From positions 8,680,001-8,744,000 of the forward strand of contig CP075496.1 in assembly GCA_021613535.1 (NCBI GenBank): a stretch of DNA of 64,000 nt, read 5' to 3'. The notes under the pieces were generated by a model. It was not told where the DNA came from and searched no databases. It saw only the letters and a program-made list of their open reading frames with translations. This document shows positions 3,888-34,336 of the stretch, piece by piece (within the stretch, counting starts at the first letter, position 1; the number at the start of each line of letters is the position of its first letter). A program made the position numbers and the translations under genes. The stretch comes from Adineta vaga. Its lineage: Eukaryota > Animalia > Rotifera.

Positions 3888-5463
3888 ATGTTTTCGACAC
3901 AGCAGCAAAGTGCATCGGTTGAACCTTTAACTGCACCCACTTCAATATTTGGATCAACGCCAATGCAAGGAATTTCAACAACACCCACTGCGGCACCACT
4001 AGAAGGATTTTCATTACCATCTGCACCATCATCAACATCAATGTCAGCACTAAAGTCTGCAACAACACTGACACCAGGTTTCGAATCCTCACCGGCACCT
4101 GAACCTTTGCAAACATTTACATCGGCATTTTCATCAACACCGGCGACAACATCAGCCTTTAAATCTGCATCAACACTGTCACCGGCATCAGCAGAACCAA
4201 CGCCATCAGTATCTACAACTGTATCATCACAAGGATTTGCGTCAACATCTTCAACAGCAGCAACATTACCACCAGGTCAAACATTTTCATCAACATTCAC
4301 ATCTGCATCAAAGATAACACCACCAATATCAATGGCAACTACTAATGCTGCATCAACACTGACACCAGCACCCGTATCAGCCATTAAATCTGCACAAACA
4401 CTAATACCAGGATTATCATCACCAATGGCTCCAACATTCCAAGCTGCATCTACAAGAGCATCCAATTCAGCATCCTCAGCAGCATCGATGACTCAATCTA
4501 ATAATGCATCAGGATCAGGATCAGCATCAGCATCATCTTCCTCTGCAACAGCAACAGCTTTGAATGAATCAAAGTCTACGTTAACAAAAGTGATTATATC
4601 AACATCTGGTGGCAAAGTTTCACCAGCACCCTCAGCTGGTCGTTCACAAGCACAAGCATTCGAATCGACCATCTCAAAAACACAAATTATTACAGAACAA
4701 GGTGGTAAACTTGAAAAGCGATGTAAACCAGGCCTCGGGTAAGTCCTCTCTATCTATATTGCATACGAATAAAAGGTATATGTTTCTATCAATTAAGTGG
4801 AGATTGTTGTCCTAAACCATTAGCTATTGGAGTACTTGTTGGTGGTATTATTGCTGGCATTGTATTAATGGCATTAGTAGGTGTCTATATACGAGATAAA
4901 GGCAAGTATTTAGTAGAATTAGACTCTTTCACTATAATGTCCACTAAAGTTTCACGAGAGGGAGCAGTTATACAGCTATGAGAATGAAATTTGTAGATAA
5001 ACTATATAACAAATCAATGCATAGATTTCTATATCGACCAATTTCATATTATTTCAGATAAAACATCGACAATTGATAATATTTTGAATGGCGTTGGTGC
5101 ACCAAACACTACCCAGGCAACCAATACAACAAACCCAAGAGTGGTAAGCACAACCGATTCTCAATCGCCTAGTACAACCAATTCTCAGTCGCCTAGTACA
5201 ACCAATTCTCAGTCGTCTAGTACAACCAAATCTCAGTCGTCTAGCACACCAAAAGGACAGACATCGAGCACACCAAAGGACAAACATCGAGCACAACCGA
5301 TTTGCAATCGTCAAGTACGACAGGCTACGACTCATCATCATCAACAGCAGGTTCTGTTAACTTGGCAGGTAGTGAGGATGGTAGTGGTGATGGTAGTGGC
5401 GATGGTAGTGGTAGCACTCAAGGTGTCGCGTATGTACCGCAGGCAGCAGCTGGTGACAATTGA
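3888..5463 (+). CDS. Ser/Thr/Ala-rich single-pass membrane protein, 3 exons, one apparent frameshift
   Basis: Exons 3888-4738, 4798-4901 (GDCCPKPLAIGVLVGGIIAGIVLMALVGVYIRDK, a TM helix) and 5058-5463. Phases agree if intron 2 uses a GC donor (AG|GCAAGT). One A is missing in the second PKGQTSST repeat at about 5275. Restoring it gives ...GSEDGSGDGSGDGSGSTQG...GDN stop at 5463. Confidence 0.7.
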
Positions 5464-6275
5464 TCAGAAGTATCAAACAATAAATAAAAAGGACATTTTA
5501 AATTTAATCATTCATTCTTCCATATGGATCAAAATTTTTCTATGAGTTATCTGACCTATACGATAAAGTCTTCTCTCAAAAAATACTCCTTCTATATCTC
5601 GATAATTCGAATAAAAAAAACATACTTAAAATTTACCATATTCTTTATGTTCTGTATCATTAATTAATCAGAATAATAAAAAAAGATGAAATCGTATCAA
5701 TTTCCAGACAATATTGAAAAAAACAAATGACATAACACAAATATGTAAACTAGAAAAATAGTAATTACAATGAATATTATTACATTATTTACATAAAAAA
5801 AAAGAAGTGTAATAGAGAATTTCTATGTTAATCATACAAACAAATATCATCATAGGAATAATCGAAAGAGTATATTTTACGTATGCATACTGGAAAACAA
5901 TTATGGCAACAGTTATAAGAAATAAAATACGCAATACGAAATCAATAATATATGTGATGTTTTGTTGTTCTACAAAAGAATGGTATGACTTTATTTTTCA
6001 TGAAAAGTATTTACAGAATGACTTTTTATAACAAAATATGTATTAATAAGATTTTTTTAAGACATTTACTTAGTCTGAAGTAACTCGAGTAAAACAACAT
6101 ATAATAATTAGTATGATTATGAACAGAAAACTTTTAAGAAAATGACTACACCAACTTTCGTTGACAATAAGGAACTACTATATCTTCGTCAGATTAAACT
6201 ATAAAATCTTCTACTATGCAGAGAAAATGACAATCAAAATTCGATACGTTTCAATTGTAATAATGATAATATTTA

Positions 6276-8000
6276 TTATCGAATCCATATCTGTACAGAA
6301 GTAAGATTGCTAGATGTACCTCCTGTAATTACACAAGTTCTTGGTAGAAAATTTTTCAAAAATGTCACAAGTTCATCTTCTACATTACATTCATTGATTT
6401 TTCGAACTTGACCATAATTTTCGCATCGAACATTTAACATTCGAAGTTGTTTCATTTCATTGACAAGAACAAGAATATCGATTCGTGTTTCGACTGTAAT
6501 AAACAATATTTCACATTGAATTCCTAATGTTGAACACGTCAATTGTCTACATTGTTCCTCATTGAAACATCCAAATTCAGATAAATCAAGTCGACGAATC
6601 GATAAATTTTTCAGACTAAACAAAAGTCTATATGAAACTGGACATTCTTTCAATGTTAATGAATAAAGTTTAGTGGTACATCGAAGTAGATTTTTCAATT
6701 GTATTTTACCAACGATAGTTCTGACTGATTTAACAGTTAATGAAATTAATCGATGTAAATTTGGAACCATAAACCAAAAACTATCATCAATTGGAAGATA
6801 TATTTCAAGATTTTCTACTTCATTAAATCGAATAGAATGACGATTCGAACTATAATATGTTAAGTTTTTCACCTCATCATACGACCAATGAATATCATTA
6901 TTAGGACAGGTCGATTGAAATTTAAGATCGGAATTTATCAGAAATTGATTGAAATTATATGGCAACGTATAAAAAGAAATTTTCACAAGTAAATTCAATG
7001 TAAACCAATGACATTGCACGAACCATTGACGTTCAACAAGCCAAAATTGACTACGAAATGATTGAAGCAATCGATCGGGTTGACCATTTATTTTACTAAT
7101 CCATCTTCGAGAAACATCCATTTTTAAATGAAAATTTTTTAAATTAGGTAAATAATTCGTAATTATCTCTTTCCATTCATCTCCATCGACAAACACATAC
7201 GATAATTCAATAGTCAAATGAGTTAAATTTGGCATATAATGTAAAAGATGATTTGTTACATGAGATGAATATTGAAGTGAAATTTTCAATTTTTTTAACG
7301 ATAAAATTGGAGATGATATTGATTGATAATCATAATTATGATCCAGTGTGATATATAAGTTGACGAGATTAATTGTATTTTCAAATAAACGATGTAATTC
7401 ATTTGAATCATATGAAAAACCATCGAGATATAAATAGTTGATTGATGTAGAAAGACTTTTTGGTGAAATAAAAAAAGGATTCCATAGATATTTCTTTCTT
7501 TCAAATCGACAATGTGTTAATTTTGATAAATTCCAAATTTGATCAAATATTGATCCATGATTAATCAATTCATCGTCAATTTCACATTGTTTGATTTGTA
7601 GACGAGTAAAATTATTCAAATGATGTAGTTCATTGATAATTAATCGAAGATGTTCGGCTGAATGAATATGATTTAATGTAAGAGATTTTAAATAAATGAA
7701 TTGATGAAATTGATATCCATAGGAGAGAAAAAGAGTTGTATGTTGAACAGATTTATTTTCATCGAAAAGTTGAATGGAAATAATTCGATTAAGAAATTGT
7801 GAAAGATATTTTTGACAAATAATATCGAAACTGATTTTTGTTATGGAATAAAGATTGAAATGACCATGTATTTGTAAATGAAGGAAAATAAGTTTACTAA
7901 AACGATAATTAAGATTATAGAATGCATGAAATTGATCAGCAATATGAAGATAATCAAAGATATCGAGTAATAATTCATTAGCTAAGATTTCTAAATGCAT
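6276..8000 (-). CDS. F-box-like/LRR (RNI-like) protein of the bdelloid-expanded type, intronless
   Basis: 574-aa ORF beginning LEILANELLLDIFDYL, followed by repeated LxxLxL motifs and YTLPY. Confidence 0.85.
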   Translation of the reverse strand: MHLEILANELLLDIFDYLHIADQFHAFYNLNYRFSKLIFLHLQIHGHFNLYSITKISFDIICQKYLSQFLNRIISIQLFDENKSVQHTTLFLSYGYQFHQFIYLKSLTLNHIHSAEHLRLIINELHHLNNFTRLQIKQCEIDDELINHGSIFDQIWNLSKLTHCRFERKKYLWNPFFISPKSLSTSINYLYLDGFSYDSNELHRLFENTINLVNLYITLDHNYDYQSISSPILSLKKLKISLQYSSHVTNHLLHYMPNLTHLTIELSYVFVDGDEWKEIITNYLPNLKNFHLKMDVSRRWISKINGQPDRLLQSFRSQFWLVERQWFVQCHWFTLNLLVKISFYTLPYNFNQFLINSDLKFQSTCPNNDIHWSYDEVKNLTYYSSNRHSIRFNEVENLEIYLPIDDSFWFMVPNLHRLISLTVKSVRTIVGKIQLKNLLRCTTKLYSLTLKECPVSYRLLFSLKNLSIRRLDLSEFGCFNEEQCRQLTCSTLGIQCEILFITVETRIDILVLVNEMKQLRMLNVRCENYGQVRKINECNVEDELVTFLKNFLPRTCVITGGTSSNLTSVQIWIR

Positions 8001-27256: not shown

Positions 27257-27712
27257 ACGATTTATTTCTTCATGATTATCAGTGTAGTTAGATCTCCAAG
27301 AATGGATATGTCGAAACATTAGAATGGAAAACTCAAAAGTTGAAAAGAGAGAATATCGAATCACCGTCAATATGATTAATCCTTCCTTTCGAAACATAGA
27401 AAGGAAAGTAGTCATCGAATCTCTTTGCATATTTGACTAATATTGATCTTGATTTATATTAACAAGTTTAATTTCAATACGTATTACGTGTTAGAAAAAT
27501 GAACGCATGTTAAAATATAAGTTAACGATGCATACTTTCGTCAATTTTTCATATACTAATTACAGAAAAAAAAAGTTATTAGGTTCATTTTTCCTCATTA
27601 TCACAGCTCTCTTTGTCTCTTTCAATGATATACCATTCGTGCAAAAACGTTTCTCACGCAAACACTTCTTATATATATGAAGACATTCTTATTCTATTAT
27701 CTATCTAAACAA

Positions 27713-28784
27713 ATGTCAACGTCATTTATTGCATCTCTTCTGGATGCTTATCGCGCAGTGATTGTTTATTCGGGAATTCCTATTCTTATTCTTGGTTTAA
27801 TTGGAAATTGTTTGAATACAATTGTATTTCTTAGTTTAAGAACATTTCGACAAAATTCCTGTGCATTTTATTTAACAGTTATGTCTATGGTTAATATTGT
27901 TCAATTGCTAACAGGCTTATTAACACGTATAATGATTACCGGTTTTAATATTGATTGGACACAATCATCATTAATTTATTGCAAATTTCGAACATTTTGT
28001 TTTCAATTAACTTCAGCAATGTCATTTACTTGCATTTGTTTGGCAACAATTGATCAATATTGTGCGACATGTTCACGTCTTCAATGGCAACAATTTAGTC
28101 GTATTAATTTAGCTCGTCGTCTTTTAATTTTAATTATTATTTGTCTATTTATTGAACAAATTCCTTGTATGATTTATTATGAACATAATCAATTAATTTC
28201 AACAGGAAAAGTTATTTGTACGATTACAAATCTATCTTTTATACAATTTAATACATATTTTAATTATCTTATTCTTGGAAATATTTTACCGTATTTAATT
28301 ACGATTTCATTTGGAATTTTAGCATATCGAAATGTTAAAAAATTAGCACATCGAACAATACCACTTGTACGACGTGAATTAGACAAACAGTTAACATCTA
28401 TAGTTCTTATACAAGTCATATTTAATTTCTTTTTTGTTTTTCCATCTTTTATTATGTATATTATTGCTTCATATGGACATATTCAAGAACCTATTGTTGT
28501 AGCACAGATTAATCTAGCTTATGCAATCACACTTTGTTTGTATTTTGTTTATTTTACAGTAAGTTTTGATTGATTTCGATGAGAATTAGTATTATTTCCG
28601 TTTAATTTAGTGTCCTTTTTACATTTATATCACTGTATCTGAAAGATTTCGTCGACAATTAGTTTTTGTTCTTTTCAAAACATATCAAAAGCGATTTCAA
28701 CGGCAACAACAACGAATTGTTCCCGATCAAACAAATCCTCGACCTAAATCGATCAATATGAATTCAATATTGATAAAACAATAA
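27713..28784 (+). CDS. Rhodopsin-like (class A) GPCR
   Basis: Seven hydrophobic segments, GLIGN in TM1, IDQY as the DRY variant. After intron 28559-28610 comes CPFYIY (NPxxY variant) and SERFR. Confidence 0.88.
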
Positions 28785-30116
28785 CAATTGTTAATTGTCT
28801 AATGAATAAACAATCTTCTTTCTATTATTATAACTAATTATGATAACAGTGCGAACAAACATATCTATTTTGAAAAAAAATTTAAAAATAAAACTATCAT
28901 CTATTGTACCGATCAGTTCGAACAAGTTCATGCAACACGTATACTAGGAAACATTGAAATAGGTACTTTTCTACGCTAGGAAAGGACACATTGATAATGA
29001 TTATTCTCATGAGTTGCTTTATACAAAAAAGAAACCTTCAAAGCAATGATATTTTATGTCAGTAATTGAACACTTAGTACAGTAATTTCTAGTTAAAGTT
29101 TTGAATACATAATGCTCAAGTATCTATCACAGAGATACGTTTACGATGAGTTCATCTTTACTTCGTATAAAATCAAATAAACAGAAAATGAGTCGATCAT
29201 GAAATATTATTACACCAATAATAGAACGAAATAAAAGTGATTTATTTTCAAAGAACAATGTTTTAATCACTAAATTCGATTGTAAACATATATCAAGAGT
29301 TGCTTCTTCGTATAGACACAATTACATAATTCGACTAACATTTGAGAATATACAAAAAGACGTCAATGTTTAATACCTTTTGACACTGATTATATTTATA
29401 AATAGTTCAAAGAGAGAGAGAGAGAACAAAAAATGTCGTTGTTTAAATGGGAAAGTACATGCCAATCTGTTTATTGTCTTGCCTAAACTTACTTTAAAAT
29501 AAATCAATTGTCTAAATATGGGATATTATTAAATTCATTGACAATCTTATTTCAATTATCTATCATTACAAGCGTATCTTCTTGTTTTAATTCAAAGATT
29601 AGCTGATTTTATTCTTTTGTTCCCTTTTCCATTATTTAATGATTTTCTATATCTTTCACAATATTATCAATGAAATTTTCCAGATATTAGTATTTCAAAT
29701 TTGATAGCCTATAATCTTTGATTATTTATTACATTTTCGTAAATATTATTGTATCCATGTGCTTTTATATCTAATATTATATTATATCAAAAAACCAAAA
29801 ATCAACGAAATCTCATTGTTTTTCGTCGTATTTTTATGTTTTCCCGAAATTATTTTTTGTCTTCATTTGCATTCAATTGAAATAATTACCATCTAGTAAC
29901 GATATCAATAGTGAGTTGAATAGATGTCGCTTAAATAAATAACAGTGTAATTCCTTTTTTACTAATGGTTCAATTGATTTCACCAATCGAATGCATTCAA
30001 TTTTTACCTTCTTCTTTTTTTTTCATTTTAAATTTTGTAATTGTAATCTCTAGTCTAAATTGAAGAACACTTTCCTAATTGAATTCAAATCTACTATTAA
30101 AGTCCTTGACAATACA

Positions 30117-31041
30117 ATGGAAACAACAACAAATCCAGGCAGTGATGAAGAAATCGCATTAGAAACAAATGATAAAACAGATGATACTTCTCCATCGACA
30201 AAAGATGATGATACAATTAATGTCAATGATAGTCCATTTCATCTACTTGAAGGTCGTTGGACATTTTGGTATACACATCGACCAACTACGTTTCGAAATA
30301 GTGCAGTTAATTATGATTCTTGTTTGAAAAAACTCGGTTTGTTCAAACCATTTCATCTTTCTTTTCTTCGTTTTTCGAATGAATTTCTTTTTCTTTCTCT
30401 AACAACAAACAGGTACATTTGGTTCAATTGAAGAATTCTGGTGCTATTATGATCATATGAAATTTCCTTCCGATCTTCCATTGTATAGGTAGGAGCAATG
30501 TAATGGCTTCTTTTTTTATTCAATTTTCTAGTTTGTTCTCTTCTGTATTCTAGTGATGTTCATCTATTCAAAGAAAATTTAAAACCCATGTGGGAAGAAG
30601 AAGGCAATCGTCTTGGTGGGAAATGGATTTTACGATTGAAAAAAGGTTTATCGACTCGTCTCTGGGAATTACTTGTCTTAGCTATTATTGGAGAACAATT
30701 TAATGTTGGAAAAGAAATATGTGGAATTGTTTGTTCCATTCGACCACAAGAAGATCTAATTAGTATATGGACAAAAACAGCAAATAATCAAACAGTTACA
30801 CAAAGAATTAAAGAAACAATGAAAAAAGTACTTAATTTACCACCAGACTGTAAGTTATTAGAATATATGCAGTAACATTGTTGAATTTCTATAAATAATA
30901 TTTCTCTTCGAATGAAAATTATTTTTTGTATAATAACATTAACTTCAATCGATTGTATTTTTAGGTCCAATGGAATACAAAACTCATAATGATTCTCTAC
31001 GTGATAATTGTAGTTATCGAAATACTGATCGTGTTCGATAA
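30117..31041 (+). CDS. EIF4E2: eIF4E-family cap-binding protein, class II (4EHP)
   Basis: Four exons giving WTFWY, GTFGSIEEFW, HLFKENLKPMWEEEGNRLGGKWILRLKKGL, GEQFNVGKEICG, EDLISIW and LNLPP..MEYKTHNDS. Confidence 0.92.
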
Positions 31042-31215
31042 ATTCATTCCAGATTATTCGCATTTTATGAAAGAGCATGTCTACATAAGATTTTGTTTTT
31101 GGTCTTCAAATACAGATATCATGTCATTTTCGTATCATCTACTTTCTTTGTTTCGAATTATAGTTGTTATTTTTTTTTCTTCTTGTTACTTTCGAAAAAC
31201 TTTCTTCCTTTTCAG

Positions 31216-31569
31216 ATGACTGAACATTTCTTTCAAGCAGCGAATCCATTATGGTATATACCATGTGATGGTGGTCTTTTACTACTTACTATCGTTACAT
31301 TTTCTCCACAAATTCTACCGAATAAATCTTTAGGTTTATTTGGTCAATTTCTCAATTATTTAGCATATAATCATCATTCATTACTTGTATGGATATTTTG
31401 GATTTCAATTTTTCTACATTTATTCGAAGCAGCAATAGCGTGGCGTATATGTCAACGTTTAAATATTGATTCTGAGAATACACGACGATGGATTAGACAA
31501 ACATTATTATTAGGTTATCCTTCGTTAGGTAAATTGAGACAATATGAAGCAAAAAAACGAAAATTATGA
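31216..31569 (+). CDS. TMEM254: TMEM254-like (DUF4499) membrane protein, copy 1
   Basis: MTEHFFQAANPLWY...SLGLFGQF...HLFEA...W..QT..LGYPSL matches the TMEM254 pattern. ATG directly follows ttttcag. Confidence 0.8.
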   Translation: MTEHFFQAANPLWYIPCDGGLLLLTIVTFSPQILPNKSLGLFGQFLNYLAYNHHSLLVWIFWISIFLHLFEAAIAWRICQRLNIDSENTRRWIRQTLLLGYPSLGKLRQYEAKKRKL

Positions 31570-31696
31570 TCAATAGAAATTTGTGCTAAGTTTATGATTT
31601 AATTTTATAATAAAATTCATCAAGAAGTTTTATAATAACGTTTTTGTCTTTTAAGACTTTTGTGATTAAATACATTTTCTTTTCTTCGAATTTTAG

Positions 31697-32038
31697 ATGA
31701 CTAATCGTTTTCAATCACCTCATCTCTTTTGGTGGATCATCATATGTGGTGGAATTAGTATTACATTTCTTCTAGCACATTATCCACACGTGATACCAAT
31801 GAATAGTTTAGGAGTACTTGGTAGTTTCTTATCGTCCCTAGTTGTGAACTATCGTCTTCTTCTAATCCTTACTTTCTGGGCCACTGTTATTGCACATGCT
31901 TATGAAGCATTACTGGCTCGTCATATTTGTCAACAACTTCATATTGATCAAATATCGACTTGTTTGTGGATGATACAAACATTTATACTAGGTTTTCCGT
32001 CACTAATGATACTCAAAGGTTATGTTCGACAACGTTAA
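31697..32038 (+). CDS. TMEM254: TMEM254-like membrane protein, copy 2 (tandem paralog)
   Basis: FQSPHLFWW...IP.NSLGVLG...HAYEA...WMIQTFILGFPSL. ATG directly follows ttttag. Confidence 0.82.
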   Translation: MTNRFQSPHLFWWIIICGGISITFLLAHYPHVIPMNSLGVLGSFLSSLVVNYRLLLILTFWATVIAHAYEALLARHICQQLHIDQISTCLWMIQTFILGFPSLMILKGYVRQR

Positions 32039-32161
32039 TAATTAATACCATATCAGATTACATGTTTTTGTTATTTATGTAATTCAAATTCCGAGAATCA
32101 ATTGATGCAATAATTTAATAGTTTTTTATGTAATTTAATCTAATCGCTTTTTAGATAAAGT

Positions 32162-32655
32162 ATGTCTGCATCATCCAATGACAAACAGGAACAAAAATCA
32201 CCTGCAGTAAAGCTGTCAGATGCTGAATGGAAAGCAAAGTTAACTCCTGATCAATATCGAATATTACGAAAGAAAGATACCGAATATCCCGAAACGGGTG
32301 AATATAATAAACATTATGAAGAAGGTGTGTACAAATGTGCTGGTTGTAATCAAGATCTTTACGAGTAAATAAACAAATGTTTATTAAATTTGAATAATGT
32401 TATGCATAAATTATTAGTTCAACATCGAAATTCGATTCACATTGTGGTTGGCCCGCATTCAGTTCATCAATAGGTACAGCAGTTCGACGAGAAAAAGATA
32501 AAGATGGCCATCGTGTTGAAATTTTATGTGGAAATTGTGATGGACATTTGGGTCATGTTTTTGAGGGTGAAGGTTTACGCGATGCAAATGGTAAACTAGT
32601 TCAACAACGTCATTGTGTTAATTCGGCTTCGTTGAAATTTCAAAAGAAAAACTAA
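32162..32655 (+). CDS. msrB: Peptide methionine-R-sulfoxide reductase MsrB
   Basis: Exons 32162-32364 and 32418-32655 give EWKAKLTPDQYRILR, CAGC, KFDSHCGWPAF, CGNCDGHLGHVF and RHCVNS. Confidence 0.95.
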
Positions 32656-32756
32656 TTTTTATTTATTTGACAACATTTACATTTTCTCTTTCTTTCTATA
32701 AATAGAACGACGTATAAAAGTCTTTAACTACAAAAAAATGAATTCGTTTTTTCTAG

Positions 32757-33446
32757 ATGAAACTTGAAAATAATTCTCTAAAGAAGAAGAAGAAACGAGT
32801 GACGAAAACTTTACCAAAGAATGTTTTCGAAATCATTGGTGAAAGTGGACAACTTGTTGAACGAGTAGATCCAAAGAAGCAAGAAAAACAAGCGAAGAAA
32901 ACACAAGATAAGGAATCAAAACCAACATTCAGTGAACGAACAACAAAACGACGCGTCAGTTTTTTCATTCATTTACAATATTCGATGTTTCTTAGTTTTG
33001 TTTTACTTCTAGAGACGTGATTGGGATGCAATGAATTATGAACCATTTGATATCACACGTAGTCGAGATTTTGAACGAGCATTACAACGAGTAGCTACAC
33101 GTGGTATTGTTCAATTGTTTAACACTGTTCGAAAACAACAACAACAACAGAAACACCATAGTTCGTCGTCGAAAAAAGATAAAAAAGAAACGAACATCAA
33201 TAAAGGAGAATTTCTTGATATGCTCAAAACCATTGATTCCGATGAAGTTTCATGCAAAATTATGAAAAATAATTCATCAATGGTATATACAACTCTTTTA
33301 CAATTTGAATGAAACATAAGAGATAAAAATGTATTTGCTTTTAGTTTGAATCAACAACAAAACCAACAACACCAGTCAGATGGAATGTTCTTCAAGATGA
33401 TCTGATGGCCAGTGTTCAAGACAATGATGATGACGATGATGATTGA
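32757..33446 (+). CDS. RRP15: RRP15-like ribosome biogenesis protein
   Basis: Three exons with ERALQRVATRGIVQLFNTV, FLDMLK, WNVLQDDLM and an acidic tail. Confidence 0.88.
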
Positions 33447-34336
33447 TTGATTGATTGTTCGGTTGTTTGTTGTTTTTGTTATATTCATAATAAATATATG
33501 AATAGAGAATCCTTATAATCAAGGATAGGAAAAATTAGTTTCGACAAAACAAAATCATTGCAAACGTTAATCAATATTGAAACATTACAACAGCACACGA
33601 ACTGTTCAGTTACAAATCAGTTTTCTTTTGTCCCGTTTGTAGATTTAAGCATTCTATCTAAGATGAATTGAACTGACTGATTTTGATCGAACTAATTATT
33701 TCACATCTGAATACTCAGTCATGTCCTTTATTTTATTACTTTTACCATAGAAATATAATGAATACGAATATTTATCTTTGTATTCAAAGCATCAAACAAG
33801 CGTGATTGTCCTATCATGAATTTCTCTAAAAGTCTATTTTCTTCACCTTAACTTGTCTGATGAATACTAAATGTAATAATCAATTTAAAATGATATATTC
33901 GATAAATTTTAGCAAGTTATGTAACAAAAGATTTCAGTCATTCTTCAATATTTCATTTGAATTAGACCCACACCCTCAATAAATTCTAATGGTTCATTAA
34001 ATTATTTTCTTTTGCATTTCACTAATATGTTAATATAATATTCTCAATGTTCGCAAAGTTTACATTTATAATCATTTCTAAAAATATTCGGGGGGAAACG
34101 TTTTAAGGACAATGTGATGATGAATATAAAACTGTTGAGTGACATATGAAAACATGTGTGTCATGATTATTCTTTCTACACATAACATTTTCTATTGGGT
34201 AACAATGACGTTAGAATTCATCATTGTCGTCTTTTAATTTTCTCTTCGCATTCTATGCTTCGTTCGTTCTTTTTTCTTTCTACCATATCAACGTCACTAC
34301 GAAATAAATTGGAGGGAGTGTGTTGACTCAGAGCAA

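What the first reader, a model, noticed from the sequence alone, without database searches (positions are those of the whole stretch)
30040..33500. Candidate five-gene trans-spliced operon: eIF4E2, TMEM254a, TMEM254b, MsrB, RRP15
Seen: five same-strand genes, functionally unrelated apart from the TMEM254 pair, separated stop-to-start by only 174, 127, 123 and 101 nt. Most other genes in the window are hundreds to thousands of bases apart. Each downstream gene has a U-rich tract and 3' splice site at or beside its ATG: ttttcag|ATG 31216, ttttag|ATG 31697, tttttag 7 nt before ATG 32162, ttctag|ATG 32757. No strong matching donor was seen in the spacers. AATAAA occurs at 31609 and 33489. Known: this is the layout of nematode and tunicate operons resolved by spliced-leader trans-splicing, and SL trans-splicing occurs in bdelloids. 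Inferred: one polycistronic transcript, led by a cap-binding protein and containing an internal duplication and a foreign-looking gene.
Basis: partly seen in the sequence, partly recalled or inferred. Interest (0 to 1): 0.8.

Follow-up and report, generated by a model that had tools for sequence, protein, structure and literature searches.

The report
Spliced-leader operon in a bdelloid rotifer
Five unrelated genes lie 101-174 bases apart in a bdelloid rotifer genome, and RNA data show the rotifer spliced leader joined at exactly the four predicted sites and upstream messages ending where the next gene begins, which is a sea-squirt-type operon layout that the papers I could search do not report for rotifers.

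Summary
Five + strand genes (eIF4E type 2, two TMEM254 paralogues, MsrB, RRP15) are separated stop-to-start by 174, 127, 123 and 101 nt.

RNA-derived contigs from four public runs (four studies) carry the 3' end of the rotifer spliced leader (..AACTTACCAAG + AG).

The window holds no SL-like exon. 42 SL RNA gene copies lie elsewhere in the genome, all more than 5 Mb away.

Poly(A) tails of TMEM254a and MsrB begin exactly at the next gene's acceptor, and TMEM254b's probably does too. No intercistronic DNA is left at these junctions, as in Ciona operons and C. elegans SL1-type operons.

The short spacers and the AG|ATG abutment are kept in at least six related lineages and partly in the genome's own ohnologous copy.

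Not shown:
- A dicistronic RNA.
- A single promoter.
- The 3' end of eIF4E2, so its membership is about even odds.

Genes 2-5 as one unit is about 0.8.

The scan has flagged similar candidates elsewhere in this genome. The papers I could search report no rotifer operons.

Verdict: a new member of a known kind, and of moderately high interest.

The parts
30015..30116 (+). 5' UTR of eIF4E2; the start of transcription lies at or upstream of 30015; no spliced leader seen
   Evidence: RNA contigs of X1, X17 and X5 begin at 30016, 30015 and 30040 with no loose end. There is no depth at 29500-29952.
30117..31041 (+). eIF4E type 2 (4EHP-like) gene. Exons 30117-30336, 30413-30488, 30554-30849, 30965-31041.
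   Evidence: Pfam IF4E 1.7e-35. PDB best hits are eIF4E type 2. Three GT..AG joints in RNA contigs.
31042..31215 (+). Spacer 1 (174 nt), with a long pyrimidine tract and the acceptor AG at 31214-31215. The eIF4E2 3' end is unresolved.
   Evidence: SL loose end CTTACCAAG before 31214 in X1. An X8 contig ends at 31053. No RNA contig covers about 31059-31213. AG|ATG is kept in 7 of 7 lineages.
31216..31569 (+). TMEM254a, single exon
   Evidence: Pfam TMEM254 4.5e-25. RNA contigs cover 31214-31586 and 31223-31697.
31570..31696 (+). Spacer 2. All of it is the TMEM254a 3' UTR. ATTAAA at 31665-31670. Acceptor AG at 31695-31696, which is also the TMEM254a poly(A) site.
   Evidence: X5 contig 13 runs from 31223 to 31697 and then A8. 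SL loose ends lie before 31695 in X1 (2 contigs), X5 and X17 (2 contigs).
31697..32038 (+). TMEM254b, single exon, 38% identical to TMEM254a
   Evidence: Pfam TMEM254 9.2e-18. X5 contig 14 is SL + 31697-32159.
32039..32161 (+). Spacer 3. The TMEM254b 3' UTR runs up to the acceptor AG at 32153-32154, followed by a 7-nt MsrB 5' UTR.
   Evidence: SL loose end before 32153 in X1. X5 contig 14 ends at 32159 with 3 further letters and one unlisted mismatch. This fits poly(A) starting after 32154, which is an inference.
32162..32655 (+). MsrB (SelR) gene. Exons 32162-32364 and 32418-32655.
   Evidence: Pfam SelR on both exons. GT..AG joint 32364>32418 in all four runs.
32656..32756 (+). Spacer 4. All of it is the MsrB 3' UTR. 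Acceptor AG at 32755-32756, which is also the MsrB poly(A) site.
   Evidence: X5 contig 15 covers 32221-32757 and then A12. SL loose end AACTTACCAAG before 32755 in X17.
32757..33446 (+). RRP15 gene. Exons 32757-32954, 33013-33282, 33345-33446. Single copy in the genome.
   Evidence: Pfam Rrp15p 1.4e-16. Two GT..AG joints. Only one match in G000.
33447..33534 (+). RRP15 3' UTR and the end of the unit. AATAAA at 33489-33494. Poly(A) at about 33529-33534.
   Evidence: X5 contig 16 ends at 33534 followed by A17. Depth falls to about zero beyond 33577.

Best explanation
This is a spliced-leader-resolved operon of the type that lacks intercistronic DNA.

RNA polymerase II transcribes across TMEM254a, TMEM254b, MsrB and RRP15. 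It may start upstream of eIF4E2, near 30015. The precursor is then cut into monocistronic mRNAs.

Each downstream cistron gets its capped 5' end by trans-splicing of the 23-nt rotifer spliced leader. The leader is joined to a pyrimidine-tract/AG acceptor that sits directly at the AUG (7 nt before it for MsrB). Each upstream cistron is polyadenylated at that same AG, so every spacer is simply the upstream gene's 3' UTR.

Shown here:
- SL addition at all four acceptors.
- Poly(A) at the acceptor for TMEM254a and MsrB.
- SL RNA genes only at distant loci.
- Conservation of the acceptor-at-ATG layout.

Inferred:
- Co-transcription from one promoter.
- Poly(A) at 32154 for TMEM254b.
- Inclusion of eIF4E2, at about 50%.
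- Whether one precursor molecule yields both neighbours, or only one of them as proposed for Ciona.
For::
- Loose ends CTTACCAAG or AACTTACCAAG lie before 31214, 31695, 32153 and 32755, in runs from three studies.
- Together with the genomic AG they equal the last 11-13 nt of the published rotifer SL, GGCTTATTACAACTTACCAAGAG (PMC3795323, Table 1).
- Poly(A) loose ends lie behind 31697 and 32757, on contigs that cover the whole upstream coding sequence and spacer.

no SL-like 13-mer in the 64-kb window.

42 copies of the SL exon followed by GT are found elsewhere. The nearest copies on the same chromosome are more than 5 Mb away.

- The same gene order is kept in at least six related lineages, with TMEM254a 52-72% identical.
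- Spacers are as short as 58 nt (TMEM254a to b) and 78 nt (eIF4E2 to TMEM254a).
- AG|ATG is invariant, while the rest of spacer 1 averages 37% column identity.

the ohnologous copy keeps eIF4E2 > TMEM254b > MsrB, with tttcag|ATG.

PMC1488885 gives the logic. Where no intercistronic DNA exists, making either the upstream 3' end or the downstream 5' end requires transcription across the boundary.
Against: - No contig bridges a junction by 31 nt or more on both sides, and contigs cannot show single molecules.
- SL trans-splicing is common in bdelloid mRNAs in general, so SL addition alone does not prove an operon.
- A promoter embedded in the upstream gene is not excluded.
- eIF4E2 RNA contigs stop near 31053-31058, and nothing covers the next 155 nt or so. 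Spacer 1 also carries partly conserved motifs that could be promoter elements.
- Flanking genes are collinear too in the related contigs, so gene order alone is not operon-specific.
Confidence: 0.75

Rival explanations
1. These are tightly packed but independently transcribed genes. Each downstream gene has its own promoter inside the upstream gene or its 3' UTR. It makes a short outron that SL trans-splicing removes. The poly(A) site coincides with the acceptor because the two processing signals overlap in a compact genome.
For: SL trans-splicing is not confined to operons in any SL-using animal (general knowledge; PMC1488885). No dicistronic RNA was seen. Contig depths differ several-fold between the genes, although the tool warns that depth is a poor measure.
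Against: The poly(A) site and the acceptor coincide to the nucleotide at two junctions, and probably at three. Spacers of 58-101 nt in relatives leave no room for a 3' UTR plus promoter plus outron. The acceptor-at-ATG layout is kept in lineages with GC content from 26% to 53%.
Confidence: 0.18
2. There are two units. eIF4E2 is a conventional monocistronic gene ending near 31055. A promoter in the 174-nt spacer drives a four-gene operon of TMEM254a, TMEM254b, MsrB and RRP15, whose first cistron is also SL trans-spliced.
For: An X8 contig ends at 31053. Depth arithmetic puts the X5 end near 31058. No RNA contig covers about 31059-31213 in any of the four runs. Spacer 1 is the longest, and it holds a 20-nt element shared with L019 and, in five relatives, a TGATAAGAA motif about 25-35 nt before the acceptor.
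Against: The tool states that a hole in contig coverage proves nothing. X1 even lacks the last 24 coding bases. The spacer is only 78 nt in L028. The eIF4E2-TMEM254 adjacency with tttcag|ATG survives in the ohnolog, whose flanks are otherwise rearranged.
Confidence: 0.4
3. It is an assembly or alignment artefact. The short loose ends are chimeric contig tips or a cis-spliced local leader exon, not a spliced leader.
For: The loose ends are only 9-11 nt long and come from contigs, not reads. Other loose ends at 33132-33155 and 33419-33443 are clearly chimeras at codon repeats.
Against: The same string appears at four sites, in runs from three studies. It extends the published SL exactly. The window holds no copy, even allowing one mismatch. 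Genuine SL RNA genes with a GT donor exist elsewhere in the genome.
Confidence: 0.02

Closest known systems
Ciona intestinalis SL-resolved operons (Satou et al. 2006, PMC1488885)
   Same: Same-strand unrelated genes. The downstream cistron is SL trans-spliced. The upstream poly(A) site lies directly at the downstream acceptor (..AG followed by the A tail), so there is no intercistronic DNA. Only one SL sequence was seen here, and an SL2-type leader was not excluded. A canonical AATAAA is often missing: here it is absent within 40 nt of two of the three sites.
   Different: A different phylum and an unrelated SL sequence. Here the acceptor abuts the AUG itself, so the 5' UTR is just the 23-nt leader. 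Dicistronic cDNAs were shown for Ciona but not here.
C. elegans SL1-type operons (Williams, Xu & Blumenthal 1999; as summarised in PMC1488885 and from my own knowledge)
   Same: No intercistronic region. The polyadenylation signal lies shortly before the trans-splice site (ATTAAA is 26 nt before 31696). There are long pyrimidine tracts in the upstream 3' UTR. The general SL is used.
   Different: This is a minor class in C. elegans. A canonical AAUAAA is present in the three characterised cases, but only one of the three junctions here has an A(A/T)TAAA hexamer.
C. elegans SL2-type operons
   Same: A cluster of unrelated, mostly housekeeping genes on one strand. Downstream genes are trans-spliced. 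The first gene need not be.
   Different: SL2-type operons have a spacer of about 100 nt between the upstream poly(A) site and the acceptor, and a dedicated SL2 leader. Junctions 2/3 and 4/5 here have no such spacer. Only junction 1/2 could be of this kind.
Chaetognath operons (Paraspadella gotoi, PMC12460157)
   Same: Chaetognaths are another gnathiferan lineage with SL trans-splicing. 18% of their genes sit in operons, defined there as genes less than 250 bp apart with SL evidence. There is no operon-specific leader.
   Different: The leaders are different. That paper treats the origins as independent. Whether chaetognath junctions lack intercistronic DNA was not compared here.

Membership tests
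SL-resolved eukaryotic operon | Two or more same-strand genes separated by very short spacers | tested here: met
   Spacers are 174, 127, 123 and 101 nt, against flanks of about 0.9-1.4 kb.
SL-resolved eukaryotic operon | All downstream cistrons receive the spliced leader | tested here: met
   The SL 3' end lies at 31215, 31696, 32154 and 32756 in RNA contigs from three studies. It matches the published rotifer SL.
SL-resolved eukaryotic operon | The leader comes in trans from separate SL RNA genes | tested here: met
   No copy in the window. 42 copies of the SL exon plus GT donor lie elsewhere in G000, more than 5 Mb away.
SL-resolved eukaryotic operon | A polycistronic precursor RNA exists | tested here: inconclusive
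   No listed contig bridges a junction by 31 nt or more, and contigs cannot show single molecules. Transcription across boundaries is implied by poly(A) at the acceptor.
SL-resolved eukaryotic operon | A single promoter upstream of the first cistron and none inside | not testable with these tools
   This needs CAGE or TSS-seq, or chromatin data.
Operon without intercistronic region (Ciona type / C. elegans SL1 type) | The upstream poly(A) site directly abuts the downstream trans-splice acceptor | tested here: met
   Met at 31696/31697 and 32756/32757. Inferred at 32154. Unresolved at 31215.
Operon without intercistronic region (Ciona type / C. elegans SL1 type) | The same leader is used as for monocistronic genes (no SL2-like leader) | tested here: inconclusive
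   Only the last 11-13 nt of the leader are visible.
C. elegans SL2-type operon | An intercistronic region of about 100 nt between poly(A) site and acceptor | tested here: not met
   There are zero nt at junctions 2/3 and 4/5. It remains possible only at junction 1/2.
eIF4E class II (eIF4E2/4EHP) | Closer to eIF4E type 2 than to eIF4E1 or eIF4E3 | tested here: met
   Exon 3 scores 143.9 bits to human eIF4E type 2 chains, against 74 or less for eIF4E1 and 57-71 for eIF4E3.

The most novel reading that the evidence does not exclude
The 3' ends of the upstream mRNAs are made by the trans-splicing reaction itself: a cut at the acceptor AG, then debranching and polyadenylation. One precursor would then yield every cistron without a conventional cleavage signal. 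Such intercistron-less operons would be a genome-wide bdelloid feature older than the bdelloid genome duplication, and possibly shared with chaetognaths within Gnathifera.
Probability: 0.15. Interest if true: 0.85.

Novelty: new member of a known kind. Interest (0 to 1): 0.62.

Why it matters
SL trans-splicing in rotifers has been known since 2005. [quoted passage not shown]

This locus gives nucleotide-level RNA evidence that bdelloids resolve tightly packed genes the way Ciona does. That would add a phylum to the short list of animals with operons. It also offers a second, independent case of operons without intercistronic DNA, in which to ask how 3'-end formation and trans-splicing share one site.

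It matters for practice too:
- Gene models and promoter assignments in bdelloid genomes should allow for operons.
- Horizontally acquired genes could gain expression simply by landing behind an acceptor.

Tried and rejected
- Exact-sequence look-ups of TMEM254a and TMEM254b, done to fetch full transcripts, found nothing. Records of the window's own genome seem to be withheld.
- L019 (1.4 kb, eIF4E2 + TMEM254a + TMEM254b on one Logan contig) looked like a possible polycistronic RNA. It keeps both eIF4E2 introns, so I treat it as DNA.
- P0003 and P0004 contigs of mRNA-like length turned out to be metagenome DNA.
- A cis-spliced leader exon is rejected, because the window has no SL-like string.
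- Gene order as operon-specific evidence had to be downgraded. The control showed that flanking genes are collinear too in L007 and L013.
- Foreign origin of MsrB: PDB hits mix bacterial and animal chains without a clear lean. I ran no further search on this side issue.
- Contig depth as a measure of co-expression was not used, because the tool warns against it.
- Multi-exon proteins were searched exon by exon, by reference.
Full report
**What is there**

Reading the sequence and scanning it exon by exon against Pfam confirms five + strand genes:

| Gene | Coordinates | Structure |
|---|---|---|
| eIF4E family | 30117-31041 | four exons |
| TMEM254a | 31216-31569 | single exon |
| TMEM254b | 31697-32038 | single exon |
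| MsrB/SelR | 32162-32655 | one intron |
| RRP15 | 32757-33446 | two introns |

Exon 3 of the first gene matches human eIF4E type 2 at 144 bits, against 74 for eIF4E1. The two TMEM254 proteins are 38% identical.

Stop-to-start spacers are 174, 127, 123 and 101 nt, and the acceptor strings are exactly as described. The nearest long ORFs on either side are about 1.4 kb and 0.9 kb away. I searched multi-exon genes exon by exon by reference and did not build joined models.

**RNA evidence**

I laid contigs of four runs from four studies on 29500-34000.

These contigs are RNA-derived. They skip all six introns at GT..AG, and some carry poly(A).

- **Leader at the acceptors.** Contigs begin with unaligned CTTACCAAG before 31214 (X1), before 31695 (X1, X5, X17) and before 32153 (X1). 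One begins with AACTTACCAAG before 32755 (X17).
- **Identity of the leader.** The published rotifer leader is GGCTTATTACAACTTACCAAGAG (PMC3795323, Table 1). Its final AG aligns on the genomic acceptor AG.
- **The leader comes in trans.** The window has no copy of the 13-mer, even with one mismatch. The genome is 100.8 Mb in six contigs, with the window at C4:8.68 Mb. It holds 42 copies of the leader exon followed by a GT donor, and none is within 5 Mb of the window.
- **Gene 1.** eIF4E2 contigs start at 30015, 30016 and 30040 with no leader.

**Where the upstream messages end**

- X5 contig 13 covers TMEM254a from 31223 to 31697 and then continues as A8.
- X5 contig 15 covers MsrB to 32757 and then A12.
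- The genomic base after each acceptor is the A of ATG. The last templated base is therefore the acceptor G or that A.
- The downstream sequence is not A-rich, which rules out internal priming.
- X5 contig 14 (leader + TMEM254b) ends at 32159 with three further letters and one mismatch that is not listed among the mid-contig differences. That is what a tail starting after AG 32154 would look like on the genomic ATAAA. This point is my inference.
- RRP15 ends at about 33529-33534, 35-40 nt after AATAAA, and coverage stops there.

Spacers 2, 4 and probably 3 are therefore nothing but the upstream gene's 3' UTR. The poly(A) site and the trans-splice site are the same place.

This is the arrangement described for Ciona. 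There the authors argue that, without intercistronic DNA, making either end requires transcription across the boundary (PMC1488885). It is also the arrangement of the minor SL1-type operons of C. elegans.

Polyadenylation signals are mixed. ATTAAA lies 26 nt before 31696. No canonical hexamer lies within 40 nt of 32154 or 32756. The AATAAA at 31609 is 83 nt from the site actually seen.

**The weak junction**

The 3' end of eIF4E2 is not resolved. An X8 contig ends at 31053. Depth arithmetic puts an X5 contig end near 31058. No contig covers about 31059-31213 in any run.

The tool warns that holes prove nothing, and X1 even lacks the last 24 coding bases. Three readings remain:
- eIF4E2 is a first cistron in a Ciona-type junction.
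- eIF4E2 is a first cistron followed by a 160-nt intercistronic region.
- eIF4E2 is a separate gene, with a promoter in the spacer.

I put its membership in the operon at about one half.

**Relatives**

A word search with TMEM254a found eight relatives, 52-72% identical. Their contigs come from metagenomes and one Logan assembly. They show the same order, eIF4E2 > TMEM254a > TMEM254b > MsrB > RRP15, in at least six lineages whose GC content ranges from 26% to 53%.

- **Spacers stay short.** TMEM254a to b is 58-130 nt. eIF4E2 to TMEM254a is 78-293 nt.
- **The acceptor keeps its place.** It abuts the ATG in 7 of 7 TMEM254a starts, in 7 of 8 TMEM254b starts as first placed (the eighth was my mis-set coordinate), and in all RRP15 starts. 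It lies 7-25 nt before the MsrB ATG.
- **Little else is conserved.** In an alignment of spacer 1, only the pyrimidine tract, AG and ATG are invariant, and mean column identity is 37%.

A control tempers this. Flanking genes are also collinear in L007 and L013, so gene order alone is not specific to an operon. What is specific is that the flanking intergenic distances vary and take up extra ORFs, while the internal spacers stay tight.

The genome's own ohnologous copy on C1 keeps eIF4E2 > TMEM254b-type > MsrB, with tttcag|ATG after a 178-nt spacer. It has lost TMEM254a and RRP15, and it has different flanks. This suggests that the block predates the bdelloid genome duplication. The dating is an inference.

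**Literature and the scan's own notes**

Full-text searches found no report of operons in rotifers. Wenzel et al. [quoted passage not shown] The 2025 chaetognath genome paper lists rotifers only loosely among lineages with trans-splicing and operonic transcription (PMC12460157).

Earlier notes of this scan describe similar candidates at other loci of the same genome, which they name as Adineta vaga. They are unchecked leads and I did not test them. The assembly size, the six contigs and the leader sequence fit that name.

**Verdict**

The best reading is a spliced-leader operon without intercistronic regions, covering at least TMEM254a-TMEM254b-MsrB-RRP15 (about 0.8) and perhaps eIF4E2 (about 0.5).

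The main rival is independent promoters embedded in the upstream genes. It is not excluded, because no dicistronic RNA or cap data could be examined.

This is a new member of a known kind of system in a phylum where it has not been reported. It is one of several such loci the scan has flagged.

Noticed in passing
G000 C1:2551158-2551338, C1:7347777-7347958, C2:8686250-8686431, C5:9.88-9.93 Mb and others: Many SL RNA genes stand as head-to-head pairs, with their 5' ends about 131 nt apart. They cluster on C5 (9.88-9.93 and 10.91-10.93 Mb), which suggests shared bidirectional promoters. The genomic base before the leader is T (TGCTTATT..), whereas the published cDNA leader starts GG.
   Followed up: partly
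window 31152-31175; L019 about 603-626: A stretch of about 20 nt in the eIF4E2-TMEM254a spacer (TCGAATTnTAGTTGTTATTTT) is nearly identical between the window and a 53%-GC relative, although the rest of the spacer has diverged. It ends in a pyrimidine/AG-like site. It could be an alternative acceptor, a 3'-end element of eIF4E2 or a promoter element.
   Followed up: partly
L007:3690-3700, L031, L028, L014, L026 (ohnolog), about 25-35 nt before the TMEM254 acceptor: A TGATAAGAA-like motif recurs before the first downstream acceptor in five relatives and in the ohnolog, but not in the window itself. It could be a branch-point region, a GATA-type site or a poly(A) signal variant.
   Followed up: no
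L026 (G000 C1:4553000-4562999), minus strand, locus coordinates about 5430-7530: The ohnologous copy keeps eIF4E2, one TMEM254 (b-type, 58% identical) and MsrB. Its MsrB has an extra 5' exon encoding MLRRSLTILTQRSLFLFTKPKYNIERYEN, which looks like a mitochondrial presequence, and a second intron. RRP15 is absent and is single copy in the genome.
   Followed up: partly
L007:4217-4614 (also L008-L011): In the lineage 70% identical in TMEM254a, the TMEM254b gene matches in three overlapping or shifted pieces. It has either gained introns or is decaying inside the otherwise intact cluster.
   Followed up: no
window 33132-33155 and 33419-33443: Long loose ends (139-255 letters) in several runs start at the CAA and GAT codon repeats of RRP15. 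These are contig chimeras at low-complexity words, not splicing. Allelic indels occur at 33440 and 33466.
   Followed up: no
window 31161-31311, run X8: Depth jumps to 153 in one bin, against 1-6 beside it. This is probably an unrelated high-depth contig landing on the T-rich tract.
   Followed up: no
L013:1806-3866: In one related lineage the upstream neighbour gene (window 27677-28573; 7tm_1 in Pfam for the relative) is tandemly duplicated.
   Followed up: no
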